Shown one piece after another: positions 11,278 through 38,809 of a stretch of 64,000 nt of DNA. The position numbers and the translations under genes are program-made. The stretch covers positions 186,001 through 250,000 of the IMG/VR virus record IMGVR_UViG_3300045971_000344; one strand, written 5' to 3'. The number at the start of each line of letters is the position of its first letter. The first letter of the stretch is position 1. Under the pieces are notes generated by a model, which saw only the letters and a list, made by a program, of their open reading frames with translations, was not told the origin of the DNA and did not search any database.

Positions 11278-11293
11278 AGTAAATTACGAATTT
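11278..11293 (-). promoter_or_regulatory. Putative phage late promoter (AAATTCGTAATTTACT)
   Basis: The same 16-mer occurs at 30739-30754. The RTAATTT core recurs upstream of many operon starts. Confidence 0.5.
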
Positions 11294-27400: not shown

Positions 27401-28092
27401 TTAAGATCAGCAGTCAGTGTGTTGTCTGCAGACAGACGGGCAGTGATTTCAGTGTTCAATGCTGCACTGTTATCAGTACCTGCGGATAAACGTGCTGTGA
27501 TTTCAAGGTTCAGGTTTGCCTGAAGAGTATCATCAGCTGCCTTACGGGCTGTGATCTCAGTGTCCAAATTGCTAGTAAGCTGTGAATCACCAGACTGACG
27601 TGCAGTTACTTCGGTCAACAGGTCTGCAGTAAGAGTGGCGTCACCAGCTACTCGGGCAGTGATTTCAGTGTTCAGGTTACTCTGAAGAGTGTTATCACCA
27701 GCTACGCGAGCCGTTGTTTCTACATCTAAGTTACTCTGAAGAGTAGCATCACCAGCGATCCTGGCAGTTACTTCAGTCAGCAGATCTGCAGTCAGGGTAG
27801 CATCTGCATTTGTCCTTGCGGTTGCTTCTGTGTTAAGATTACTCTGAAGAGTGTTGTCTGCGGTGGTCCGGGCAGTTAGTTCTGTCAACAAGTCAGCAGT
27901 AAGGGTGTTCGATGCGGAAGTACGCGCAGTGATTTCAGTATTAATATTAGCTTGGAGATTGTCCAGGCTAGTACCAAGTCCTTCGATCTTGCTCTGCTTA
28001 ATACCGGCAGCGTTAATGATCTGACTATCGGTAATACCTTCCAGTGTAGTTGCGACAGCAATTTGACTGGCTTTAATCTGTGTAATAGACAT
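24436..28092 (-). CDS. Long coiled-coil repeat fibre protein (EITAR/EVTAR repeats)
   Basis: 1218 aa with dozens of mostly 18-aa L.TE[IV]TAR..AD.TL repeats, the fibre motif AP.ALDTLKEIA, and a C-terminal VYLNGLRQ...DY domain. Confidence 0.85.
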   Translation of the reverse strand: MSITQIKASQIAVATTLEGITDSQIINAAGIKQSKIEGLGTSLDNLQANINTEITARTSASNTLTADLLTELTARTTADNTLQSNLNTEATARTNADATLTADLLTEVTARIAGDATLQSNLDVETTARVAGDNTLQSNLNTEITARVAGDATLTADLLTEVTARQSGDSQLTSNLDTEITARKAADDTLQANLNLEITARLSAGTDNSAALNTEITARLSADNTLTADLNSEITARKAADLTIQGNLDTLAGDTYRKADVYTKVETDGNISTAIAGVINSAPAALDTLKEIADAIANDASIATTLTTAISTEATARANADNTLQSNLDIEITARMNAVSNANGDLTAAINSEITSRVAGDNTLQSNLNSEITSRTNADNTLQSNLDIEATARTTADNTLTADLLTEVTARISGDAILTSGLNTEITSRTNADSTLQSNLDIEVTARKAADDTLTADLLTEVTARIAGDATLTADLLTEVTARIAGDATLAADLLTEVTARTTAINNLSNTITGDITTAIANEVTARTNADATLTADLQTEITGRTNADATLQGNINTVTANLLTEVTARTTADNTLTADLQTEITARTNAVATEVLDRTAAINTELTARTAADNTLTADLLTEVTARISGDATLAADLQTEITARLSAGTDGSAALNTEITARTNADNILQSNLDVETTSRIAGDATLTANLNTEITARTNAVATEVQDRTAAINSEITSRTNADNTLQSNLDVEATARKSADDTLTANLLTEVTARQSVTLQDIYNQTAVGGGVANIKLTTGKDFRITDDTEDTIYFQVDSETGSASMTGPVNVSGNMTITGELYVSGSTTQIDSVVTNSEHLDLSPAGAAKGLSVQPVTGFAAAEIVQVKTEAGLNALKINADGSVHVQDAVDADAPVTLGQLNADITARTAAINTEITARTNADNTLQSNLDIEITARINAVSNANGDLTTAINNEITSRTNADATLTADLLTEVTARTNAVATEVLDRTAAINTEITARTAADNTLTADLLTEVTARKSADSTLQSNLDIETTARVNADNTLQSNLNTEITARTGADSTLQANLDIETTARVAGDATLTADLLTEVTARLSAASTLTADLNTEITARTNADATLTANLLTEVTARAAAIKVIDETAVFRASVIINDIFSGALDGFNMNFTTSVSFDAGTEQVYLNGLRQHPANDYTVSGNTVSFVTAPGVNDLLIIDFIAAYV

Positions 28093-28195
28093 GTGATCTC
28101 CTTAAAATTTTGTTTTTATTATCATTTAAAACCCTCTCTCTTTCTTTCGCTCACTCACTCACGAACTCACACGTTCTCTTTTTACACTCAGTTTA

Positions 28196-28414
28196 CTAAC
28201 TCATGAATTGGCGCAACCCCATTACAAGTGAATCATGAACTCTACAACAAGAATTAGCATATTCAATTTCCAACTCTCCCTTTGTCCTCTCGTTACCGTC
28301 ATCGTCCATTGCCTCTAACCTAAACATTCTGTTTTCAAAACTAAGTAGTTTATGCCCCCGCATCTTAATATATGCAGCTAAACCTAAGTCCCTTGTCTCA
28401 ATCGCGCTAGTCAT
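28196..28414 (-). CDS. Small hypothetical protein (DUF5659-like)
   Basis: T.DL.LAAY motif; AGGAG RBS. Confidence 0.55.
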   Translation of the reverse strand: MTSAIETRDLGLAAYIKMRGHKLLSFENRMFRLEAMDDDGNERTKGELEIEYANSCCRVHDSLVMGLRQFMS

Positions 28415-28433
28415 CTGCTTGGTCTCCTGTTTA

Positions 28434-29099
28434 TTATGCTTTATTATAGTCGATTACTAAAACGTCATCTAATTGCGGGGGATCCATAAGAAGAATGGAG
28501 GTATTTGTTTCTTCAAAATAGTCTTCACCTGGTAATATTCGCAGACCGTTCAAACTAACTGTAACTGAACCGGATCTAAATGCCGGTAGAATATAGGACT
28601 GGTTGAATCCGTCTATTGCGCCTGTATAAGTTCCTCCATAGATTCGGTTATTAACTAGATCTGTAATTGTCCCACCACTTATGGTTACGATCGCTGTATC
28701 CATTAAGTCAGTTTGATAATTACGGACCGCTGTAAGAAAATCAGAAGAGATATTAAAGAGTAAAAAATCTGGAATCTGAATAAGACCAGAATGATTGGGT
28801 CTACCAATTATGCCTTCAAAAGATTGTGGATCATAGATAGCATCCATAGGATATTCTTGTCTTACGGTTATAACAACTGTAGGTGGATTGCTGTTGTCAT
28901 CAACTGAAATAACATGATAACGTAAAACCTGAGGATAAAATGCAGGCACTCCATTGGAATAAAAAATATCTCCTATCTGGACGTCTCCTGAATAGTATAC
29001 TCCTGTGTTATCAACTACATTTCCAGTAATCTGAAAATCACCAGGCGGATCAAGCGCAGTCACGCCTTGCACTATAAAGGAGGCATTAAATTTACTCAT
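28434..29099 (-). CDS. Virion protein; paralog of 30768-31346 with a C-terminal domain shared with 24436-28092
   Basis: G.VVDNTGV...GD..YS N-terminal motif; GAIDGFN...LNGLR..PG.DY C-terminal motif. Confidence 0.7.
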   Translation of the reverse strand: MSKFNASFIVQGVTALDPPGDFQITGNVVDNTGVYYSGDVQIGDIFYSNGVPAFYPQVLRYHVISVDDNSNPPTVVITVRQEYPMDAIYDPQSFEGIIGRPNHSGLIQIPDFLLFNISSDFLTAVRNYQTDLMDTAIVTISGGTITDLVNNRIYGGTYTGAIDGFNQSYILPAFRSGSVTVSLNGLRILPGEDYFEETNTSILLMDPPQLDDVLVIDYNKA

Positions 29100-29112
29100 A
29101 GTGAGCCCCCCC

Positions 29113-29697
29113 TTAAAATGCTATGTTCATTATGTAATTCATATTCGCTGTAAGGCCTGTAATCTGAAGAGTGTTTTGTGCTGTATTCCAGTTTATCGCA
29201 CCAACTGCCGCTCTAGACCCAGGTGTATCCCTAAAACAAATATATTGAATTGCATAATAGCTAGAGCCAGTACCTACACCAAATCCAGACGGAACGGTAA
29301 CAAGAAAGTTAGTATTAGTTGAAAGCTGAGTTGAAGTTAAATACAGAGAAGCTGTTATTATTTGTACTCCAACGGGAACAGTAATAACTGCAGTTGGAGG
29401 ACTTCCACTTATTGTAATATCTACTCCTGACCCTGTAGCTAATACCTGACAATTTGGGCTCGATGCTGTTGCGTATCTTGTTATAGACGCACCACCACCA
29501 GCTTGTCCCTGAAAACCTTGTGCTCCTTGGTAACCTTGCGCTCCCTGCGGTCCCTGCAATCCTAAGGCTTCTAAGGATTGTCCCACTCCCTTACCCATGA
29601 ATAATTGTTTAGTATCAAGGGTTAAAAGCAATTCACCAAGATCAGCGGAACTAGGTAGGTTGGCAAAATTACCCCTTTTTAAGAGTATTTTTGTCAT
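29113..29697 (-). CDS. Fibre protein with Mtd-N/hyaluronidase-N-like domain and short collagen segment
   Basis: ILLKRG...LGELLLTLDTKQLFMG followed by GxQ triplets. Confidence 0.7.
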   Translation of the reverse strand: MTKILLKRGNFANLPSSADLGELLLTLDTKQLFMGKGVGQSLEALGLQGPQGAQGYQGAQGFQGQAGGGASITRYATASSPNCQVLATGSGVDITISGSPPTAVITVPVGVQIITASLYLTSTQLSTNTNFLVTVPSGFGVGTGSSYYAIQYICFRDTPGSRAAVGAINWNTAQNTLQITGLTANMNYIMNIAF

Positions 29698-29711
29698 TAT
29701 TAAACCTCACG

Positions 29712-29746
29712 GTGGAGTGCAGTGAGCATTACTCACTGCACTCCAC
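29712..29746. repeat. Perfect 15-bp inverted repeat (hairpin without U-tract)
   Basis: GTGGAGTGCAGTGAG-catta-CTCACTGCACTCCAC. Confidence 0.85.
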
Positions 29747-29757
29747 TAACCTTTAGA

Positions 29758-30702
29758 TTAAAATGCTCCGCCGTCTACGGTACCAACTGAAAGTACACCT
29801 GTTGTAAAGACCAAACCATCACCAGCGACTGTTGGGTCAAGTTGGAAGTCATTAACGCTTTTTGTTACACCGGTTGATGCTGTGTAGGTAACTATGGCCG
29901 ACATACGGGCTGTGATCTCAGTGTTAAGGGCAGCTTGAAGAGTACTATCAGCAGATGTCCGGGCAGTGATTTCAGTGTTCAAGTTAGAGGTTAAGGTACT
30001 GTCCGCACTTGTACGGGCCGTGATCTCAATGTCCAGGGCAGCTGAAGTAGCTTTGTCGCCTACAGATGTAAGAAGTGTACTAAGGGTACCTTCATCTGCC
30101 TGAAGAGCGGTAGCAAGTTCTTGGAGGGTATCAAGAGTAGCTGGGGCAGTACCAACCAGATCAGCAATAGCAGCCTTACGAGCAGTTACTTCAGTATCAA
30201 TTGCTGCTTGAACTGTTGAAACCGCGGATGTTCGGGCCGTGATCTCAATCAATAAATCAGAGGCTACTGTACTAACTGCAGAAGTCCGTGCAGTGATTTC
30301 AGTCAACAGGTCCGCTGCTACAGTACTAACTGCAGAAGTCCGGGCGGTGATTTCGGTATTAAGGGCCGTAACATCTGCTTTTCCATCCAGTGCTGATTGG
30401 AGCGCAGTACTATCTGAAGGTACACCAGTCAAGGACGCAAAACTCGCGGCCGCTGCTTCAGGTGCAAGAATAACCCAAGTAGTACCGTTATGACGCTTCA
30501 TTACGTTATTAGTTGTGTCTACCCACAAGCGGGTAGTATCGGAGGGGGCTGAGGTAGCAAAGTTTACATCTGTAACTTTAGCAACGCCTGTACCCGTACC
30601 GATATAAAGTTCATTAGTGTCGGTAGTTACCAACGGTTCACCGACAGTTGCAGTTGCAGGAAGATTGGCTTTCAAACCACGCTTTAGTAGAACTTGTGTC
30701 AT
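29758..30702 (-). CDS. Fibre protein with Mtd-N-like domain, EITAR repeats and C-terminal DGG motif
   Basis: VLLKRG...GEPLVTTDTNELYIG, EITAR repeats and APATLDTLQELA; ends VDGGAF. Confidence 0.75.
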   Translation of the reverse strand: MTQVLLKRGLKANLPATATVGEPLVTTDTNELYIGTGTGVAKVTDVNFATSAPSDTTRLWVDTTNNVMKRHNGTTWVILAPEAAAASFASLTGVPSDSTALQSALDGKADVTALNTEITARTSAVSTVAADLLTEITARTSAVSTVASDLLIEITARTSAVSTVQAAIDTEVTARKAAIADLVGTAPATLDTLQELATALQADEGTLSTLLTSVGDKATSAALDIEITARTSADSTLTSNLNTEITARTSADSTLQAALNTEITARMSAIVTYTASTGVTKSVNDFQLDPTVAGDGLVFTTGVLSVGTVDGGAF

Positions 30703-30738
30703 GTTTATTTCTCCTTTTTTGTCTTTTTATTATTCGTA

Positions 30739-30754
30739 AGTAAATTACGAATTT
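30739..30754 (-). promoter_or_regulatory. Putative phage late promoter (identical to 11278-11293)
   Basis: AAATTCGTAATTTACT, about 40 nt upstream of the 30702 start. Confidence 0.5.
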
Positions 30755-30767
30755 CAAATATTGATTG

Positions 30768-31346
30768 TTAAAATGTTCCGGAGTCAACTACTTGTGACCA
30801 AGACAAACTACGATCTTTGTTTCCAAATAAAACTGAGCTATCTTCAGATGGTACCGGCAATTCAGGTTGTAGAGCGATTGGGTTATTTGTAGTTAGTGAA
30901 GGATTACTTATACTTAAGTATTTACTGTGCCTAGTTGATTCTACGTTCCTAATTGCGGCAATAAAAAATTCATCTACGCCATTAACAAACATGGAAGTTA
31001 TTGCCATTGTTCCTAAGTCATCTGTTGCACCAATTACTGCCTGTGAACTTTGCAAGGGGTAATCATAAGTTGTCCAGCCGGAGGGCTGTGCTTCTAGCAT
31101 ATCCCATTTTAAGATCACCCTTAAGAAAGCTCCATTGGTAGCCACATCAATAGTTGTTATCTTAAATCTAAGAGCTCCTAATCCTAATAAAGCACAGTCA
31201 GAATAAACTACGTCTCCTAGTTTAGCGTCCATTGCACTGAATACACCAGTGTTATCAATTACAGTTCCCTCTAAAACCCACTCATCTGTAGTTCCACCCA
31301 CAGGGGTGACAGATGAAATATCCAGCCTACCATTTAGCACATTCAT
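30768..31346 (-). CDS. Virion protein; paralog of 28434-29099
   Basis: GTVIDNTGVF...GDVVYS; ends VDSGTF. Confidence 0.7.
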   Translation of the reverse strand: MNVLNGRLDISSVTPVGGTTDEWVLEGTVIDNTGVFSAMDAKLGDVVYSDCALLGLGALRFKITTIDVATNGAFLRVILKWDMLEAQPSGWTTYDYPLQSSQAVIGATDDLGTMAITSMFVNGVDEFFIAAIRNVESTRHSKYLSISNPSLTTNNPIALQPELPVPSEDSSVLFGNKDRSLSWSQVVDSGTF

Positions 31347-31356
31347 CTAACACCCC

Positions 31357-33720
31357 TTAAAACACGAGATTTATCCAACACGGCTGACTGTTCTGCGTAA
31401 ACCCTGTTAGCTTCAGCGTGTGGGAATTTGTTCCAAAATTTCCGAAAACTGTTGACTTATTAGCATACCCTGCTCCATCATCTGAGAAAACTTGAAACTG
31501 TGGACAGTACAGGGTGCTATACGCAGTATACAGAGAGGAAGATACTTCGGCTAAGTCAATGGTTACTCCAGATGTTGCAGTCGACATGTCCGTTGCAGTC
31601 ATGTGGATACTCATACTATGAAGTATCGTATTAGCAGCAACTGAAATCTTAACATCCGTTGTCTGACTACTTCCATCTTTTAGGTATGCTATAGCCGTAG
31701 AATATTCTGTAGGTGCGTCTAAAGATGCTACTGTTGCATAACTATTTGAGGAAGATAAAGGGTTCATTGTATTAGCTGATACACCACAGCGTATTCTAGC
31801 TGTCGTGTAGCCCCCAGTTGAACCTGACCCAGGCAAACCTTGAGGACCTTGTGGTCCTGCTACTGTTGAGGCCGTTCCTTGTGTTCCTTGTGAACCAGTC
31901 AGACCTTGGGGTCCCTGTGAACCTGTGTTACCTTGTGAACCTTGAGGTCCCTGACTTCCAGTCAAACCTTGAGGACCAGTACTACCTTGATTACCGGTTA
32001 CACCGATATTACCCTGACTGCCTTGACTACCGGTCAACCCCTGGTAACCTTGAGTGCCCTGACTACCAGTATTACCTTGATAACCTTGACTACCTTGTGC
32101 TCCAGTAGTTCCCTGTGCTCCTGTTAAACCTTGATAACCTTGAGGGCCTTGACTACCAGTTTGTCCTTGACTACCAGTGTTGCCTTGACTGCCAGTCAAA
32201 CCTTGAGTTCCTTGAGGACCCTGAATACCTTGAGCTCCACTTAAATCGGTAACGTAAGAATAAGCGTTGGATGCCCAAATATATAGTTTAGAATTATCTG
32301 GATCATTAACGTCATTAGTATTAATGACAGCAAATTCGCCGTTACTAATCCCCGTAGGACTAGTGTCCGCCAATAACTGCGCTACAGAAGTATAAACTTT
32401 CGAGACAGTAAAACCTTGTCCTGCAACGCCTTGACTGCCCTGAGGTCCTTGTGCGCCTTGGGATCCAGAAGAACCTTGTGTACCTTGTGTACCTTGAGAA
32501 CCAGTCTGGCCTTGTGATCCAGTTAGTCCTTGAGAACCTTGTGCTCCGACCAGGCCTTGACTCCCAGTTAAACCTTGTGTTCCTTGACTGCCTTGTGTTC
32601 CCTGACTGCCTTGTGTTCCTTCATTTCCTTGTGGTCCAGTTAACCCCTGTTGACCTTGACCTCCAGTGTTGCCTTGATAACCTTGAGGGCCCTGACTTCC
32701 AGTCAAACCTTGGGTTCCAGTTAATCCCTGAGGACCTTGACTTCCAGTATTACCTTGAGCTCCTTGACTACCGGTAAGACCTTGTGCACCTACCTGACCT
32801 TGAGGTCCTTGACTTCCGGTGTTACCTTGTACTCCCTGTGCTCCTGTTAGGCCCTGAGGACCTTGCACTCCAGTATTACCTTGAGTTCCAGTATTTCCCT
32901 GCGATCCTTGACTACCAGTTTGTCCTTGTACTCCCTGTGCTCCTGTTAGGCCTTGAGGACCTTGGACATTAGACGGAGCACCAATTTGTCCTTGGTAACC
33001 TTGGTAGCCCTGATTACCTTGAGTACCAACCGCACCTTGGACACCTTGTGTTCCCTGAGCTCCAGTTATTCCTTGTACGCCTTGAGTGCCCTGAGGTCCT
33101 TGTGCACCGACCGTTCCTTGTACCCCATCTGTTCCTCGGGCAATAAAAAGTTCCCAGTAAACACCGCTAACAGGAGTTTCATTGGTATTGGTAGTCAAAC
33201 AAACCCACGCCTCACCGTTATAGTTAACTATATCGGCTGGTGCATAAGTTGTAATTGATGCCCAATTACCTTTGTAAGATCCAGTTAAGCCAATTGAACC
33301 TTGAATACCTTGAGTTCCTTGTTGACCTTGGATACCCTGAGGTCCTTGATATCCCCTAGGTCCTTGTGCACCTTGAGGACCTGACCCTCCGGATCCACCT
33401 GTGCCTAACTGCTGACCGTTCCACGTTGGGTTGCCCACACCGTCCACGCCCAGCATTTCAAGCGCAGTTCCATTAGTATGAGCGTGCATGGATACAAGTT
33501 TCCAGTTTGCATTGTTAGCATACGCTGCCTGTGTTTCAGTTCCTGTAAACTCAAACTTGTAGTAAGTATTAGTCGAGCGAACAAAAACAATCATCCCTTT
33601 ATAGCGATAACCCGCAGGAATGGCATCCCTCTCAGCAACGGTATTAACGGATTCTCGACTATCCAGTGCCTTGTTGACCACATCAACAAAAATTTGTCCG
33701 CTTATAGGGTTTCCTTTCAT
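31357..33720 (-). CDS. Collagen-like (Gly-X-Gln) fibre protein
   Basis: 787 aa. N-terminal LDSR...RYKGMIVFV domain, about 150 GxQ-type triplets, and a C-terminal domain resembling that of 29113-29697. Confidence 0.85.
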   Translation of the reverse strand: MKGNPISGQIFVDVVNKALDSRESVNTVAERDAIPAGYRYKGMIVFVRSTNTYYKFEFTGTETQAAYANNANWKLVSMHAHTNGTALEMLGVDGVGNPTWNGQQLGTGGSGGSGPQGAQGPRGYQGPQGIQGQQGTQGIQGSIGLTGSYKGNWASITTYAPADIVNYNGEAWVCLTTNTNETPVSGVYWELFIARGTDGVQGTVGAQGPQGTQGVQGITGAQGTQGVQGAVGTQGNQGYQGYQGQIGAPSNVQGPQGLTGAQGVQGQTGSQGSQGNTGTQGNTGVQGPQGLTGAQGVQGNTGSQGPQGQVGAQGLTGSQGAQGNTGSQGPQGLTGTQGLTGSQGPQGYQGNTGGQGQQGLTGPQGNEGTQGSQGTQGSQGTQGLTGSQGLVGAQGSQGLTGSQGQTGSQGTQGTQGSSGSQGAQGPQGSQGVAGQGFTVSKVYTSVAQLLADTSPTGISNGEFAVINTNDVNDPDNSKLYIWASNAYSYVTDLSGAQGIQGPQGTQGLTGSQGNTGSQGQTGSQGPQGYQGLTGAQGTTGAQGSQGYQGNTGSQGTQGYQGLTGSQGSQGNIGVTGNQGSTGPQGLTGSQGPQGSQGNTGSQGPQGLTGSQGTQGTASTVAGPQGPQGLPGSGSTGGYTTARIRCGVSANTMNPLSSSNSYATVASLDAPTEYSTAIAYLKDGSSQTTDVKISVAANTILHSMSIHMTATDMSTATSGVTIDLAEVSSSLYTAYSTLYCPQFQVFSDDGAGYANKSTVFGNFGTNSHTLKLTGFTQNSQPCWINLVF

Positions 33721-33778
33721 TCGTACCCCCTAACGATAAAGTTACCTTGTCCCATAAAGGTCCTCCAATAGTTATTGT

Positions 33779-34366
33779 TTAAATAATGTAGCGTATTGTT
33801 TTACCACTTAAAGACAGGCAAGGATCTGCTGTAAAGTACACATAAAAGTCAACACCATCATAAGTAACTTCTCTAGGAAGGACTTCGTAAGATGCAAGAA
33901 TAGAAGCATAGCTAAAATTAGGATCCTGGACGTCAACAATAGGCCCATAGCTCTTAGGATAAGCAAAGGTCCTATAAGTTACATTAGACGTATAGATAAC
34001 ATCTTTAGGTCCACCTTGCCATTGCATGGTTGTCAAACCCGCAAAGAATCCTGGAGGGTCAAGTATTGGATCATTAGTAAGTACGTCCCCAAAATAGACG
34101 TTGGTTGCAACATTATTTGTGAATCTAAAAATTACATCCAGTGCTTCGGACACAGTCCTCACGTCTACTTGCTCATTGAAACGATTAGAGAATGCCGATC
34201 TAACATAGGGCATTTCAGAAGCGGAAACTGGACGTCCGCCGGGTGTTACACCATCACCTACCCAAAGTTGTAATACATCTGTACACCATACGAGCTCACC
34301 ATTAGCAAAGACCACCCCAACTCGCTCAGAGTTTGTTCCTCTTCTGACCTGAATACAATTTGACAT
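33779..34366 (-). CDS. Mtd-N-like domain virion protein
   Basis: IQVRRGT...GELVWCTDVLQLWVGDG.T.GG. Confidence 0.7.
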   Translation of the reverse strand: MSNCIQVRRGTNSERVGVVFANGELVWCTDVLQLWVGDGVTPGGRPVSASEMPYVRSAFSNRFNEQVDVRTVSEALDVIFRFTNNVATNVYFGDVLTNDPILDPPGFFAGLTTMQWQGGPKDVIYTSNVTYRTFAYPKSYGPIVDVQDPNFSYASILASYEVLPREVTYDGVDFYVYFTADPCLSLSGKTIRYII

Positions 34367-34385
34367 AGACTATTCTTCCTTTCCT

Positions 34386-34619
34386 TTATTGTATTGTTCC
34401 ACCATCGTACTTAACACTGTCAACAGGATACACATCCTGAATTAAGCCCCCATCTATGTGCTCCATTAGATGGGTGAAGCGATCCCTACAGGTTCCACCA
34501 TCTATTAAGGCATGTAGGTTAAACAGATTCCTAGGTATAGTGTCTGCGGCAGTATATTCAGACAGGGCAATAACATTACCTTGTCCATCATATACCAGTT
34601 TAACCGGATATATGTCCAT
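34386..34619 (-). CDS. Small virion adaptor with three DGG motifs
   Basis: Start reassigned to ATG 34619 (AAAGGGG RBS). Contains LIDGG, HIDGG and KYDGG. Confidence 0.6.
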   Translation of the reverse strand: MDIYPVKLVYDGQGNVIALSEYTAADTIPRNLFNLHALIDGGTCRDRFTHLMEHIDGGLIQDVYPVDSVKYDGGTIQ

Positions 34620-34719
34620 TATGGATACCCCTTTATGTTTATATACATATAAATTATGTATTGTTTGTTCTATATTGATTATGAAATACGTAGCAAAATT
34701 AAAGAATCTTAATTTTCGG

Positions 34720-35300
34720 GGCGCCGCGCTAAGTGTTGCATCCCGCACGCTGTGCTAGCACAGCGTGCTTTCAATAAGCATCTAGATCCGGTTCTGCTAG
34801 CGATACTCAACAAAGTGAAGTATATAGTGCTTCTGAGCTAGCTCAGAAGCTAAAGGTAAGCGTGGTTAGATTTGGAAAATGCTAAGAAAGGAAGGATAAA
34901 GGGAAGTGATAAGCGAAGTAAGTACAGCAATAAGTAAAGTACCGCCGAAGGCGGATTGAAAATCCCAAAAAAAAAAAAAAAGAAAAGCTTTCCAGATTTT
35001 AGGTACAGTGAGGGTTTTATGGAAAGGGCCTAGTGAACCTAGTGAGGTTAGAGCTATCCATTACCGCCCTACCACCGCACCTTTCACACTGTCCTCATGC
35101 TCTTTCAATCTTTTCCCTTTTGTACTGTTCCTTGTACCCTAACTCCCAGGTTATCGATCTTACGGCAGACTACGTCTGCCATGTCTCGAGCTAAGCTCTC
35201 AACATTTGAGAAACTTCGTTTCTCTAGCATTGTTTATCATTGTGAGACAATGCGCGGTCGCAAGAAATCCCGCGGAAACGGGATTTACTGATAAAATTAC
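34720..35300. other. Candidate replication origin / structured DNA control region
   Basis: Perfect 24-bp and 22-bp palindromes centred on GCTAGC, C-GNA-G triloop hairpins on opposite strands, an A15 run and a purine-skew inversion, all close to the coding-strand switch. Confidence 0.5.
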
Positions 35301-35374
35301 AAATAAACATAAAAATTATAAAAAATACAAGTAATTTATGTATTTCTATAGGATTTTATGAGAATTCGGGTACA

Positions 35375-36870
35375 ATTATCAGGGTGTTGGGTTATGGTCT
35401 CCAGGTCGTGCATTACAACCACAAGCTTGAGTCATAAGCTAGTACCAAACACCTCCTACACGGACGGTTTACTTTCATCTGGAACAGCACCCTTATTTAG
35501 CGAGGAGTGCCACCCTCGACTACCTGACTCTTAGGTACTTGCCTAAGACTCTCGTATCCTCTTGTCGGATACGGCCACGCTGGTAGTTTTTGTTCTATAA
35601 ACAGTGTTGGAATATTATTCCGCAGTTCATAGAACGTTGCGTGGTCTACATGCCAGGACATGTTAGATTAGATACCTGGTCCCATTACCTAGCCTTCAAT
35701 TCATAAGTATTCGGTGCGCTTTCGGTACACACCTACATATATTGTTTTAAGCTCATCCTTATGAGCAAAATACTTATGTTCTTGAAGATCGCAACCCTTG
35801 GGGTTAGGGCTCCCCAGTCTGATGGATTCTTATCGTACTTGGTCTAAACAAGTTAGAACCCTGTTTCCGATAGTCATTTCGTGCCAATGTACTTTCGTAG
35901 CGCAGGTCTCGATGGACCCGACTATTGGCCTTATCGCTGTTACGGAAGTAACGATCTTCCTACAGCTCATTCCATTGTGCTGGTAATAGTGAGTAGGGTG
36001 AGTACCTTTATACTCTGATATTAGGCATTGTCCACATTTTGTGTGGTAATGGAAGACATTATCTGCATAAGCACATTGCGTAGCGGTAGTTAGCCCCTCG
36101 CTTCCGTGGTCTCCATGTGGGACTCAATCCCACCTCCCGAGTATGACAATTGCGGTCGCCTTTAATCTCGGACATAGCCTTTCTCTAGATCTTATCTGTG
36201 CGTATCTGCGATGTGCTTAAACGCCATTCATACCTTTATACTCAACCTAGGTCACTATGCCTATATCTGAAGAGTAAACCTGGAGAATTTTTACAGATTT
36301 TAAAAATCTACGTGCGTTTGATCCGCGTTCAGGTACAGTGTACCCTTCGACTTACGCCTCGTTTTCGTAGATCTTTCGGTGGATCCAAAGCCACCATAAC
36401 CCAAACAACTCAGAATGAAAACCTGATTACCGCAACATTACGCCCTTGGGTTAAAACCTCCGGGGCAGCCCGAGTATCGTAGTACCTACTATTTCCTGTA
36501 GGTTAGCATTGGGCTATGCCTTCTCGTGACTGTGTTGCCTTCATCCTCGGATAATCAGTGATCCTGATTTGCACTATTAGACTCGGATATATAACGCATC
36601 ATATCTACTTAGATTTGGTTAAACCGTCTTTAGGATAGACGATAAGACCGATTGAAGTTTACGAAACTTATCACATAACGGACAGGTTCTTTAAAGGAGA
36701 ATAGTCAGAAAAACCTTGTGGGGTTTGTAGGGGCTCGCGCATCCTACTTCCTCTGTGAGGCATTCGTAAAGTTCCCGCTCAATGCCCGCGGTACTAATGC
36801 TCTTGGTACAGCGTACTCATAACTGGTTACAACAAGACAGTTGTCTCCACTTATCAGGACGATGTACTTC
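35375..36870 (-). ncRNA. Candidate very large (~1.5 kb) structured non-coding RNA of unknown class
   Basis: No credible long ORF. More than 25 hairpins seen by eye. G-U pairs and GNRA loops favour the minus strand. A 12-bp perfect long-range helix joins 36393-36404 and 35387-35398. A CGTAATTTG motif lies upstream. Confidence 0.7.
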
Positions 36871-36901
36871 TCTTATTTACATTATTCACTCGTTGTATAA
36901 A

Positions 36902-36910
36902 CAAATTACG
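36902..36910 (-). promoter_or_regulatory. Putative late-type promoter for the large ncRNA (CGTAATTTG)
   Basis: Matches the RTAATTT motif seen upstream of virion operons. Confidence 0.4.
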
Positions 36911-36951
36911 TAGTTCAGCAATGACGTTAAAAAATACGTCTAGTGTGTACC

Positions 36952-36994
36952 TAGTACAACCCAGTAACGCTTATGACTTTACTGGGTTGTACTA
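36952..36994. repeat. Perfect 16-bp inverted repeat downstream of the RuvC-like gene
   Basis: TAGTACAACCCAGTAA-N11-TTACTGGGTTGTACTA. Confidence 0.85.
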
Positions 36995-37016
36995 CATTAA
37001 GTAACTATAATCTTAA

Positions 37017-37652
37017 TTATTTTTTAATGATACAGGTTTTAATGCGAGGTTTGGATATTCTTTTTGCTTTCTTAGCAGCCTTTGCTTCTTCGTCTACTCT
37101 AAAGCCTATTTCTTTCAAACCAGCTATTATACGTCCTACGTTCCTATCGCTAAGCGTGCTATAGGGTTTTACACCTAAATGAGAGTATAACCCATACAGG
37201 GCGATAAAGGTGGAGTCTACTAGGTGAGGTGGACAGGGCTTTACTTCTGCATAGATTTCTGATAGGTCGTAATAGCGTTTTATCTGAGATTTCCAAGTAA
37301 CAGCGGGAATAACAGTACAGACAGTTGACTTTAATTGTAGAGCAGTTACCGCAAGCATACAAGTAATCGCTTCTCCTAACTGGACCAGTCCACCCCTCGG
37401 CATGAATCTCTCGGCTATCCAGATATCCGGGTAGCCATGTTCAGTTATAAGGGCCTTTACACTTCGTCTATATTTAGTCAAGACCTTTCTAAAGTTGGTC
37501 TTTATATCCGTTGGAACAATGGGATTAGCTACCATCCAGGACTTTAACGAGACTATCCTAAAGGTATTATCTTTAGTAAGTTGTACGGTTAATAGTGTAC
37601 GCCCATAGTTTACCGTTGCAGGGTCATCTCCAAGAATAACATATTTTTTCAT
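37017..37652 (-). CDS. RuvC-like (RNase H fold) Holliday junction resolvase
   Basis: Motifs ILGDDPATVNYG, IAERF, PAVTWK and HLVDS, plus a basic C-terminal tail. Confidence 0.7.
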   Translation of the reverse strand: MKKYVILGDDPATVNYGRTLLTVQLTKDNTFRIVSLKSWMVANPIVPTDIKTNFRKVLTKYRRSVKALITEHGYPDIWIAERFMPRGGLVQLGEAITCMLAVTALQLKSTVCTVIPAVTWKSQIKRYYDLSEIYAEVKPCPPHLVDSTFIALYGLYSHLGVKPYSTLSDRNVGRIIAGLKEIGFRVDEEAKAAKKAKRISKPRIKTCIIKK

Positions 37653-37741
37653 AGCCCACACTCACTCTCAAAAGAAAAATTACATAATTTATTATTAAAT
37701 ATACAATCATAATCAAATTACAAACAAAGTGGGGGGCCTAT

Positions 37742-38809
37742 ATGGTCCAACGAATATCACATAAAAACCCAATTAACGCTAAAAACTTCACAGCAAAGTT
37801 GGCAGAACAGCGTAGAATTGAGATACAAAAGGCGCGTCAAAATTTCCAACAAAACTCTTTCTTGGTTGACAGCCCAGTAATTATATATTACTCTCAGATC
37901 AGAAATGGCTATACCTGTACGTGCCACGCTTATGAAAAGCCAGTAGAGGCGGAGAACGTACTAACTGTGGAGCCCACACTGGTTAATCATACTAATAAGG
38001 TTACAGAGATTTCGTACTCTACGCTGTCCAAGTCTCCGATGTTTGGATCATCTCTCCCTGTAGAGTCCAATATAGAAGACCTTTTATTGGATGATACCGA
38101 GACTGCTGAATCAAGTTCTACCCACCCATTATTTGGGACGCTCTTCAATAAAGGTTCTGATTGTGGGATTTGTATGAGGACAGGATTTAGCCCCTTATTT
38201 AGTCCCGTGGGTCGCCAGTTCTATGCTCTTACTACACATAATGTGTCTAACCTGGACGGGTATTATGTGGATACAACAGCAACCCCTCATTTATTTAAGC
38301 ACATACCTGAGGGACGTTCTTTATTTACATTTAAGGTACCCAAGTATTTCAAGACCTGTTCTTACAGGATTTTTAATAACGTACAGCCCTTGGAAGAAAA
38401 TCTCTATGTGGGGGCCGTTGCGCTAAATAAAGACCTGCTGAATTTAGCACGTGGGCAGGAATTAGTTGTGGAAATCCGTAACAAGGACTTTACTCATGTC
38501 TTTATTGAGTTCGATCTAGGTGTAGAGACTCACGCCAATTTTCCTCAGTTTTCTGTCTCAAAGGATTACACTTCGTTTTTCAATCTACAGTCAGTGTCAA
38601 TTGAGCTCCCTCCTTCAATGGGGAACTGTCAGGTGAATGATATTGTGTATGCTCCACAATGGAGTCGTTCTTGGCTAGTGTTTGATGTTCAGCCAAAATG
38701 GGAGGGGCCGAATCAGACAGTATTACTGGGTACAACCGTACAAGGTAGATTAATCCAGCCCCTAGAAACATTTTCAATATTAAGATCATTAAGACCAATA
38801 GAAAGGTAG
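37742..38809 (+). CDS. Putative virion structural (neck/head-closure-like) protein with a zinc-binding motif
   Basis: CTC...CGICMRTGF motif; 355 aa. Function inferred. Confidence 0.5.
   Translation: MVQRISHKNPINAKNFTAKLAEQRRIEIQKARQNFQQNSFLVDSPVIIYYSQIRNGYTCTCHAYEKPVEAENVLTVEPTLVNHTNKVTEISYSTLSKSPMFGSSLPVESNIEDLLLDDTETAESSSTHPLFGTLFNKGSDCGICMRTGFSPLFSPVGRQFYALTTHNVSNLDGYYVDTTATPHLFKHIPEGRSLFTFKVPKYFKTCSYRIFNNVQPLEENLYVGAVALNKDLLNLARGQELVVEIRNKDFTHVFIEFDLGVETHANFPQFSVSKDYTSFFNLQSVSIELPPSMGNCQVNDIVYAPQWSRSWLVFDVQPKWEGPNQTVLLGTTVQGRLIQPLETFSILRSLRPIER

What the first reader, a model, noticed from the sequence alone, without database searches (positions are those of the whole stretch)
35375..36870. 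Candidate giant (~1.5 kb) ornate non-coding RNA in a phage genome
Seen in sequence: about 1.5 kb lacks any convincing gene in an otherwise fully packed genome, and is tiled almost continuously with hairpins. Read on the minus strand, examples are CGUAUCC/GGAUACG, UCUUAGG/CCUAAGA, GUUCUAUGAAC/GUUUAUAGAAC, CAUAAGUAUUU/GAAUACUUAUG, GGUGUG/CGCACC, GGGUUCU/AGAAUCC, GGGCAUU/AAUGCCU and GUGGGA/UCCCAC. Non-Watson-Crick positions are almost all G-U on the minus strand and would be A-C on the plus strand. GNRA loops (UAC-GAAA-GUA, GC-GCGA-GC) also read on minus. A perfect 12-bp helix spans about 1 kb (36404-36393 with 35398-35387) and is extended by AUCAGG/CCUGAU (36427-36422 with 35383-35378). A second possible 8-bp helix (36860-36853 with 36568-36561) closes a 5' domain. 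A copy of the phage's putative late-promoter motif lies about 40 nt upstream. Established knowledge: large ornate phage-associated RNAs such as GOLLD and ROOL are known but are well under 1 kb, and I do not recognise rRNA, tmRNA, RNase P or intron cores here. Inference: this may be a new class of multi-domain phage RNA expressed late, for example a scaffold, a packaged RNA or a ribozyme.
Basis: partly seen in the sequence, partly recalled or inferred. Interest (0 to 1): 0.92.

Follow-up and report, generated by a model that had tools for sequence, protein, structure and literature searches.

The report
Phage EGFOA RNA with long leader
The 2.3-kb gene-free stretch of this jumbo phage is real non-coding sequence. 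Its only conserved part is a divergent copy of the known EGFOA RNA at the 3' end of a probable ~1.6-kb transcript, so it is a variant of a known unexplained phage RNA, not a new class of giant RNA.

Summary
The gene-free stretch is real and larger than reported: 34749-37016, 2,268 nt, with no ORF under any stop reassignment and no protein-family signal. It is not an unknown RNA throughout. Positions 35384-35488 (minus) match Rfam EGFOA (RF02955) at 30.1 bits, below the gathering score of 37.7, with E=0.006. I accept the match for two reasons:
- Four related phage lineages carry EGFOA in the same place, downstream of the same resolvase.
- The window's changes to the conserved boxes (CUAG/CUAG to CGUG/CACG) keep a putative pseudoknot, read by eye, paired.

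All five lineages share one layout: resolvase stop, a phage promoter-like motif about 100 nt later (not found in one lineage), 0.6-2.1 kb of non-coding sequence, EGFOA, then a GC hairpin. This suggests a ~1.6-kb minus-strand transcript in the window.

Only the 3' third is strongly structured (35489-35800, z=-6.6). The 5' ~1.1 kb folds weakly (z=-2.4 on both strands), varies in length between lineages and is not alignable, although neighbouring genes are. The 12-bp long-range helix exists, but it competes with the EGFOA fold and is absent from all four relatives.

Verdict: a divergent EGFOA RNA with an unusually long lineage-specific leader, not a new class of giant ornate RNA.

The parts
36952..36994 (-). 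Perfect 16-bp hairpin 23 nt after the resolvase stop. Probably the terminator or 3' stabiliser of the resolvase transcript.
   Evidence: Inverted repeat I2, 100% complementary. Local z=-6.1 on the minus strand.
36900..36911 (-). Copy of the phage's intergenic promoter-like motif (consensus TCGTAATTTAYT; here ACGTAATTTGTT). Proposed start region of the non-coding transcript.
   Evidence: Exact copies lie 20-45 nt upstream of gene starts at 11278(-), 30739(-) and 46746(+). A GTAATTTA copy sits 88-130 nt after the resolvase stop in L002 and L005, with a GATAATTTA variant in L007. On its own the window copy has 2 mismatches, which is at chance level.
35801..36890 (-). 5' leader of about 1.1 kb. 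It is non-coding, lineage-specific and only weakly structured.
   Evidence: z=-2.4 (minus) and -2.5 (plus). No nucleotide similarity to the syntenic gaps, although flanking genes align at 64-77%. No shared 12-mers beyond low-complexity runs. No protein-family hits.
35489..35800 (-). Hairpin-rich block directly upstream of EGFOA. It contains a three-way junction at 35694-35787, a long bulged hairpin at 35575-35644, and hairpins at 35553-35573, 35529-35548 and 35501-35518.
   Evidence: MFE -104.5 against -74.3 +/- 4.6 kcal/mol in shuffles, z=-6.6, 0 of 100 shuffles as good. Helix probabilities 0.78-1.00, except 0.54 for the 35501-35518 hairpin. Its position matches EGFOA-assoc-1 in L103, but there is no sequence match.
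35384..35488 (-). Divergent EGFOA RNA. It has the CCAGAUG box (35476-35482), the ACCGUC box with the pseudoknot 5' strand CGUG (35459-35462), the conserved loop GUAAUGCACGACCUGG (35401-35416) with the pseudoknot 3' strand CACG (35407-35410), and the P1 3' strand (35384-35391).
   Evidence: Rfam RF02955, 30.1 bits, E=0.0062, full-length model 1-108. Syntenic with EGFOA that passes the gathering score in L002, L004 and L007, and with weaker hits in L005 and L112. Two compensatory changes keep the CUAG/CUAG pairing (sequence).
35287..35383 (-). AU-rich linker with weak A-U hairpins. On the plus strand it also contains a promoter-motif-like GTAATTTAT at 35331.
35265..35286 (-). Terminator-like hairpin with an A-tract, a GC stem and a U-tract. 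Proposed 3' end of the RNA.
   Evidence: P=0.86. It has the same style as other hairpins at gene ends in this phage. A C-rich/G-rich hairpin followed by AUUG or UUUG lies 30-110 nt after EGFOA in L002, L005, L007 and L112.
36393..36404 (-). Its partner, 35387-35398, lies inside EGFOA.
   Evidence: Inverted repeat I10, P about 0.9. It overlaps the EGFOA P1 3' strand. No counterpart exists in L002, L005, L007 or L112.
36277..36285 (-). 5' arm of a second long-range helix of 9 bp. It pairs with 35399-35407, which is the conserved EGFOA loop sequence GACCUGGAG, directly adjacent to the 12-bp helix.
   Evidence: P=0.95. It is specific to this lineage.
34749..35264 (-). Downstream non-coding tail. 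It contains structured hairpins, a U13 run (34969-34981 on the plus strand), a terminator-like hairpin (34942-34954) and two perfect zero-spacer palindromes (34829-34850 and 34745-34768).
   Evidence: z=-3.8 for 34935-35264. Palindromes I8 and I11. Terminator scan. Pyrimidine-rich tracts with UUUCCAAAU are shared with L002.

Best explanation
The gap encodes a minus-strand non-coding transcription unit whose conserved functional core is an EGFOA-family RNA at its 3' end.

**Proposed layout**
- Transcription probably starts just downstream of the phage promoter-like motif at 36900-36911, about 105 nt after the resolvase stop.
- It runs through a fast-evolving ~1.1-kb leader.
- It then crosses a ~310-nt block of stable hairpins (35489-35800) and the EGFOA element (35384-35488).
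- It ends at the hairpin at 35265-35286, giving an RNA of about 1.6 kb.

**Proposed action**
The EGFOA core folds into a compact domain that I read as pseudoknotted. Two other family members self-assemble into a trimer and a strand-swapped dimer in vitro. The working model is therefore a phage-made RNA that acts as an oligomeric scaffold or particle, sitting at the boundary between the recombination gene and the tail-fibre module. It may be released from the long precursor by processing.

**Status of each step**
- Shown here: non-coding status, EGFOA identity, synteny, local structure.
- Inferred: transcript ends, processing, function.
For: **EGFOA identity**
- The window gives a full-length EGFOA hit.
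- EGFOA scores above the gathering score downstream of the orthologous resolvase in L002 (50.6 bits), L004 (48.7) and L007 (38.7).
- L005 has a core hit and L112 a 29.4-bit hit in the same position.
- The window's substitutions in the two conserved boxes are mutually compensatory.

**Shared layout**
- The promoter-like motif lies 88-130 nt after the resolvase stop in WIN, L002 and L005, with a variant in L007.
- No sense-strand terminator-like site lies before EGFOA in L002, L005 or WIN.
- A conserved GC hairpin follows EGFOA.

**EGFOA elsewhere is also embedded in longer conserved non-coding modules**
- One well-sampled clade conserves about 600 nt, with compensatory changes in hairpins upstream of the Rfam motif: 14 of 117 pairs.
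- In L103 the 250-nt EGFOA-assoc-1 ends 12 nt before EGFOA.
- All 35 EGFOA sites examined lie in gene-free gaps; those not cut short by a contig end measure about 0.6-2.2 kb.

**Phage origin**
- Neighbouring genes include major head protein, terminase and portal, DNA polymerase and integrase.
- The two-box pattern finds 0 hits in 185,579 species genomes.

**Oligomerisation**
- bioRxiv 10.64898/2026.07.01.735769.
Against: - There is no transcript evidence of any kind.
- The window's promoter copy has 2 mismatches, and such matches occur at chance frequency.
- The EGFOA score is below Rfam's gathering score.
- The leader shows no conservation, no strand-biased folding and a 3.5-fold length range (585-2,170 nt), so it may be a spacer and not part of a functional RNA.
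- A shorter transcript from an unrecognised promoter nearer to EGFOA is not excluded.
- The function is extrapolated from in vitro behaviour of two other family members.
Confidence: 0.55

Rival explanations
1. Only a short RNA is functional: EGFOA alone, or EGFOA plus the ~310-nt hairpin block, about 0.25-0.65 kb in all. The 5' ~1.1 kb is non-functional spacer or decayed DNA left by gene loss or by traffic of mobile endonuclease genes.
For: - The leader folds no better on one strand than on the other (z=-2.4/-2.5).
- It is not alignable between lineages, although adjacent genes are.
- Its length varies from 585 to about 2,170 nt.
- Homing-endonuclease genes (GIY-YIG, HNH) occur near the gap in relatives.
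- In other phages the conserved module is only about 600 nt.
Against: - No pseudogene remnants were detected.
- The promoter-like motif is conserved at the far 5' edge of the gap and not near EGFOA.
- No internal terminator was found.
- MFE z-scores also miss EGFOA itself, so weak z-scores are not evidence of absent structure.
Confidence: 0.28
2. One reading: the whole ~1.5 kb is one giant ornate RNA with a defined multi-domain fold, closed by the 12-bp helix 36393-36404 / 35387-35398.
For: - z=-6.0 for the whole span on the minus strand.
- The 12-bp and the adjacent 9-bp helices have P of 0.9 or more and together cover 21 contiguous nt.
Against: - Most of the z-score comes from the 3' third.
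- Both long-range helices consume the conserved EGFOA loop and the P1 3' strand, so they are incompatible with the conserved fold.
- No equivalent helix exists in L002, L005, L007 or L112.
- With G-U pairs allowed, shuffled targets give helices of 10-13 bp.
- No conserved sequence blocks lie outside EGFOA, unlike GOLLD, ROOL and OLE (from my own knowledge).
Confidence: 0.1
3. A DNA-level element, such as a replication origin, packaging site or regulatory region at the switch of transcription direction.
For: - The cumulative GC-skew minimum and the strand switch lie at about 37.7-38 kb, 0.7 kb from the gap.
- Perfect zero-spacer palindromes and an A13/T13 run occur at 34745-34985.
Against: - There are no iterons or repeat families.
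- GC content matches the genome, about 0.43.
- EGFOA in other phages lies between co-oriented genes.
- The conserved part is an RNA family with covarying pairs.
Confidence: 0.05
4. Unrecognised small protein genes, or genes read in an alternative genetic code.
For: Small ORFs of 30-54 aa with ATG or TTG starts, and stop-free stretches of up to 97 codons, exist on both strands.
Against: - No stop reassignment opens a long ORF.
- All flanking genes read in the standard code.
- No family or tblastn hits.
- The minus-strand ORF starts lack the strong GGAG-type ribosome-binding sites seen before the real genes (read).
Confidence: 0.02

Closest known systems
EGFOA RNA motif (Rfam RF02955; Weinberg et al. 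2017, PMC5737381)
   Same: - The match is full-length to the model.
- It has the CCAGAU and ACCGUC boxes and the GUAANGCNNGACCUGG loop.
- It has the P1 helix and the helix flanking the loop.
- It lies in an unusually large gene-free region.
- It is known only from uncultured sequence.
   Different: - It scores 30.1 bits, below the gathering score of 37.7.
- It lacks the first hairpin.
- Both CUAG boxes are changed, in a compensatory way, to CGUG and CACG.
- It sits at the end of a 1.5-kb leader in a 295-kb jumbo phage, next to a resolvase gene.
EGFOA-assoc-1 (Rfam RF02970)
   Same: It is a structured domain directly upstream of EGFOA. In L103 it ends 12 nt before EGFOA. The window's hairpin block 35489-35800 occupies the same position and has a similar size.
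   Different: There is no sequence or covariance-model match in the window, even at E up to 10. Any equivalence is positional only.
GOLLD and ROOL large ornate RNAs
   Same: They are large, phage- or prophage-associated non-coding RNAs of unknown function that form homo-oligomers. Some EGFOA loci also lie near tRNA genes (L087, L104), as GOLLD and ROOL do (PMC5737381).
   Different: There is no Rfam match. GOLLD and ROOL have conserved sequence and structure along most of their length. Here only about 110 nt is conserved.
phi29 packaging RNA (pRNA)
   Same: It is a phage-encoded small RNA that works as a homo-oligomer. Some EGFOA copies sit beside terminase, portal or capsid genes.
   Different: There is no sequence or structural homology and no evidence of a packaging role. 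This is an analogy from my own knowledge only.

Membership tests
EGFOA (RF02955) | Covariance-model score at or above Rfam's gathering score (37.7 bits) | tested here: not met
   30.1 bits, E=0.0062 for 2.6 kb against 4,227 families. Loci with both exact conserved boxes (L087, L104) and the syntenic L112 (29.4 bits) also fall below the gathering score, so the threshold misses true divergent members.
EGFOA (RF02955) | Conserved 5' boxes (CCAGAU, ACCGUC) and conserved loop GUAAAGCUAGACCUGG | tested here: met
   CCAGAUG and ACCGUC are present. The loop matches at 13 of 16 positions.
EGFOA (RF02955) | Pairing between the 5' CUAG box and the loop CUAG (a putative pseudoknot that I infer from the sequences; it is not part of the Rfam model) | tested here: met
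   The window has 5' CGUG (35459-35462) and loop CACG (35407-35410). Two positions changed on both sides and all 4 pairs are kept. This was read from the sequence. No formal covariation statistic was computed.
EGFOA (RF02955) | Closing helix P1 and the helix flanking the conserved loop | tested here: met
   The cmscan alignment marks 4 non-canonical pairs in all. P1 has 7 of 8 pairs and the loop-flanking stem is GGUU/GACC.
EGFOA (RF02955) | Same genomic position as accepted members in related genomes | tested here: met
   EGFOA lies downstream of the orthologous resolvase (42-46% amino-acid identity) in L002, L004, L007, L005 and L112.
EGFOA (RF02955) | Homo-oligomer formation | not testable with these tools
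   Shown by cryo-EM for only two other members.
EGFOA-assoc-1 (RF02970) | Covariance-model match upstream of EGFOA | tested here: not met
   No hit at E up to 10 in 34600-37200. It is present in L103 at 252 bits.
Known large RNAs (GOLLD, ROOL, OLE, HEARO, group I/II introns, RNase P, tmRNA, rRNA) | Match to the Rfam model; for introns, also a split host gene | tested here: not met
   There are no gathering-level hits in the 64-kb window and none of these at E up to 10 in the gap. ARAGORN finds no tRNA or tmRNA. The resolvase is complete, matching PHROG profile positions 4-172 of 187.
Diversity-generating retroelement template region | A template repeat matching a variable repeat in the nearby Mtd-like tail genes | tested here: not met
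   Only collagen-type repeats occur in 28000-38000. No repeat links the gap to the tail genes.

The most novel reading that the evidence does not exclude
The full ~1.6-kb transcript is a single functional RNA. Two leader segments (36393-36404 and 36277-36285) clamp 21 contiguous nucleotides of the EGFOA 3' half (35387-35407). This would hold the oligomerisation-competent core in a masked state until processing or a trigger releases it. On this reading it is a self-gated precursor of an RNA assembly and the longest EGFOA-type RNA known.
Probability: 0.1. Interest if true: 0.85.

Novelty: new variant of a known kind. Interest (0 to 1): 0.55.

Why it matters
EGFOA is a conserved RNA of unknown function. 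It was recently shown to self-assemble in vitro, and it has so far been known only from unassigned environmental sequence.

This locus and the related ones place it firmly in phages:
- Every neighbouring gene with a family match is phage-type.
- It is absent from 185,579 prokaryote species genomes.

The locus also gives a repeatable genomic layout in a jumbo-phage lineage: resolvase, promoter motif, long leader, EGFOA, hairpin, tail-fibre genes.

The Rfam motif appears to be only the conserved core of longer transcripts of roughly 0.6-2.2 kb. That turns the question of what EGFOA is into concrete, testable transcript models. It also shows that the Rfam threshold misses divergent members whose putative pseudoknot has co-varied.

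Tried and rejected
- **Alternative genetic codes:** no long ORF under any stop reassignment.
- **Pseudogene remnants:** no credible Pfam, PHROG or tblastn match for ORF fragments. The L112 231-aa ORF has no match in the other gaps.
- **Nucleotide homology of the gap:**
  - No blastn match to GenBank phages.
  - No blastn or nhmmer match to syntenic gaps outside EGFOA.
  - No shared 12-mers beyond low-complexity runs.
- **Closer relatives of the window phage:** none found.
  - The resolvase search gave hits of at most 46% identity.
  - The window-specific EGFOA 16-mer found only its own contig.
- **EGFOA in cultured phages:** none found by blastn.
- **Microdiversity between L002 and L004:** too few and too mosaic differences to test constraint.
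- **DGR template repeat:** none.
- **Extra or inverted EGFOA copies in the gap:** none at E up to 10.
- **Conserved long-range helix onto EGFOA in relatives:** none above chance.
- **Custom covariance model:** not built. MAFFT misaligns the variable middle of EGFOA, and the Rfam model already answered the question.
- **Sigma-70 promoter and canonical terminator scans:** at or below chance.
Full report
**Source and setting**

The window is part of IMGVR_UViG_3300045971_000344, a 294,944-bp uncultured jumbo-phage contig. Its conserved proteins are distantly related (22-28% identity) to those of Pseudomonas phages Lu11 and PaBG and of Erwinia and Dickeya jumbo phages.

On the minus strand the gene order is:
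- a Holliday-junction resolvase at 37017-37661 (phrog_18317, E=4e-23)
- the gene-free stretch
- a 120-aa ORF
- an Mtd_N-domain tail protein
- a collagen-repeat tail fibre

**Is it really gene-free?**

Yes, and the stretch is larger than reported.
- Nothing of 100 aa or more lies between 34749 and 37016 (2,268 nt). The next largest gap in the window is 568 nt.
- Ignoring TAG, TGA or TAA in turn opens no ORF longer than 154 aa.
- Nine ORF fragments have no credible Pfam or PHROG match; the only hit is one Pfam match at E=0.025, below its cut-off.
- The two longest fragments have no tblastn match in 50,697 phage records.
- GC content (0.43) is like the rest of the genome.
- There are no repeat families that would suggest iterons, CRISPR or a DGR template.

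**Is it structured beyond chance?**

Partly. All values below use dinucleotide shuffles.

| Span | z minus | z plus |
|---|---|---|
| 35270-35800 | -7.1 | -5.1 |
| 35489-35800 | -6.6 (0 of 100 shuffles as good) | not run |
| 35800-36870 | -2.4 | -2.5 |
| 34935-35264 (downstream tail) | -3.8 | not run |
| Coding control | -0.3 | not run |

- The signal comes mainly from the 3' third. The 5' 1.07 kb gives only weak folding with no strand preference.
- In 150-nt windows the gap averages z=-1.8 on the minus strand, against -0.3 in flanking coding sequence.
Two are displaced by competitors, and the proposed 8-bp 5'-domain helix has probability 0.

**What it is**

Rfam gives nothing at gathering thresholds. 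At E-value thresholds the top hit in the gap is EGFOA (RF02955) at 35384-35488 on the minus strand. It is full-length, scores 30.1 bits against a gathering score of 37.7, and has E=0.006. Three independent lines make this a true member.

1. **Synteny.**
   - The resolvase has only seven relatives in 5.8 billion proteins, all at about 45% identity.
   - Every relative on a contig long enough to show it has a large gene-free gap downstream.
   - Those gaps hold EGFOA on the same strand: L002 50.6 bits, L004 48.7, L007 38.7.
   - L005 has an exact conserved loop. A fifth lineage, L112 on a 170-kb contig, scores 29.4 bits.
2. **Compensatory change.**
   - In the consensus, a 5' CUAG box can pair with CUAG in the conserved loop.
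   - The window has CGUG (35459-35462) and CACG (35407-35410), so both inner positions changed on both sides and all four pairs are kept.
   - The covariance model cannot credit this pairing and penalises the changes, which explains the low score.
3. **Threshold behaviour.** Loci that carry both exact boxes (L087, L104) also fail the gathering score.

**What EGFOA looks like elsewhere**

- A two-box pattern found 28 metagenome loci and none in 185,579 species genomes.
- Five IMG/VR contigs carry it. No GenBank phage does.
- Neighbouring genes include major head protein, large terminase plus portal, DNA polymerase, integrase, NrdG and SbcC. On this sample EGFOA is a phage RNA.
- Every copy lies in a gene-free gap; those not cut short by a contig end measure about 0.6-2.2 kb.
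- In the best-sampled clade about 600 nt is conserved between subclades whose upstream genes differ. This block has an AT-rich promoter-like box about 400 nt upstream, and 14 of 117 predicted pairs show double compensatory changes, including hairpins upstream of the Rfam motif.
- In L103 the 250-nt Rfam motif EGFOA-assoc-1 ends 12 nt before EGFOA.
- The Rfam motif is therefore the conserved core of longer RNAs. A 2026 preprint describes the family as lying in unusually large intergenic regions and shows a trimer and a strand-swapped dimer by cryo-EM.

**Architecture in the resolvase-linked lineage**

- The phage's intergenic motif TCGTAATTTAYT occurs exactly at 11278(-), 30739(-) and 46746(+), 20-45 nt before gene starts.
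- GTAATTTA copies are enriched upstream of ORFs: 4 of 20 within 90 nt of ORFs of at least 100 aa, against 5.4% expected (p=0.02). Further copies lie before smaller called genes.
- A copy or variant lies 88-130 nt after the resolvase stop in WIN (36900-36911, 2 mismatches), L002 and L005, with a GATAATTTA variant in L007. No such copy was found after the resolvase in L112.
- No sense-strand terminator-like site lies between it and EGFOA.
- In all five lineages a hairpin with a C-rich and a G-rich arm, followed by AUUG, UUUG or CUUG, lies 30-110 nt after EGFOA. In the window it is at 35265-35286.
- This predicts RNAs of about 0.95 kb (L002), 1.6 kb (window) and 2.15 kb (L005).

**Why not a new giant ornate RNA**

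- The distance from the resolvase stop to EGFOA is 585 nt (L007), 872 (L002), 1,528 (window), 1,741 (L112) and about 2,170 (L005).
- Outside EGFOA the gaps share no detectable sequence. The flanking genes of the same genomes align at 64-77%.
- The 12-bp helix is real. A further 9-bp helix (36277-36285 with 35399-35407) abuts it. Both consume the conserved loop and the P1 3' strand of EGFOA.
- None of four relatives has a counterpart above chance.

**Conclusion**

The finding is a real non-coding locus on the minus strand. Its conserved core is a divergent EGFOA RNA, preceded by a strongly structured ~310-nt block and a long, fast-evolving leader. A 1.6-kb transcript is plausible but untested.

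Three points are not in the literature I could search: the phage assignment, the conserved layout and the compensatory change in the putative pseudoknot.

Noticed in passing
window 34745-34768 and 34829-34850: Two perfect palindromes with no spacer (12+12 and 11+11 nt), both centred on CTAG. They lie just upstream of, and overlapping, the start of the 120-aa ORF. They look more like protein-binding DNA sites than RNA hairpins. L002 and L007 share a related block, UUUAAGGNUAGCUCU, in the same region.
   Followed up: partly
window 36003-36015 and 36231-36243 (minus strand): An exact 13-nt direct repeat, GAGTATAAAGGTA, occurs twice in the 64-kb window, both times inside the gap, 228 nt apart. About 0.04 such pairs are expected by chance. 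It contains a TATAAA element.
   Followed up: partly
window 35325-35345 (plus strand): A GTAATTTAT promoter-motif-like sequence points antisense to the proposed RNA, between EGFOA and its hairpin. It could drive an antisense transcript. L002 and L005 have no counterpart.
   Followed up: partly
L103 4757-5009 and 5021-5129: Rfam EGFOA-assoc-1 (252 bits) lies 12 nt upstream of EGFOA. The two probably form one RNA of about 370 nt, inside a 1.9-kb gene-free gap next to a DNA polymerase gene.
   Followed up: partly
L087 1247-1319; L104 203-274: tRNA genes lie within 0.3-1 kb of EGFOA on the same strand. This recalls the tRNA association reported for GOLLD and ROOL.
   Followed up: no
L099 687-829 and 9792-9901: Two EGFOA modules, about 90% identical over 1.6 kb, lie 9.1 kb apart on one 11,350-bp contig. 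This could be two diverged copies in one small phage genome or a chimeric assembly.
   Followed up: no
window 37662-37741 and about 38000: The cumulative GC-skew minimum coincides with the divergent promoter region between the leftward and rightward gene blocks. It is a candidate replication origin or simply a transcription-strand effect.
   Followed up: partly
window 33779-34366 and 31357-33720; L005 13991-14584: Tail proteins with an Mtd_N domain (the N-terminal domain of the Bordetella phage tropism determinant) and a 787-aa collagen-repeat fibre follow the gap. No reverse transcriptase or template repeat was seen nearby.
   Followed up: partly
L003 12921-13919; L005 4466-4786: Homing-endonuclease-type genes (GIY-YIG, HNH) lie near the gene-free gap in relatives. 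This suggests the region tolerates insertions.
   Followed up: no
window 34969-34981: An A13 run on the plus strand (U13 on the minus strand) is followed on the minus strand by a short GC hairpin (34942-34954) scored as terminator-like. This may be the end of a second small transcript downstream of EGFOA.
   Followed up: partly
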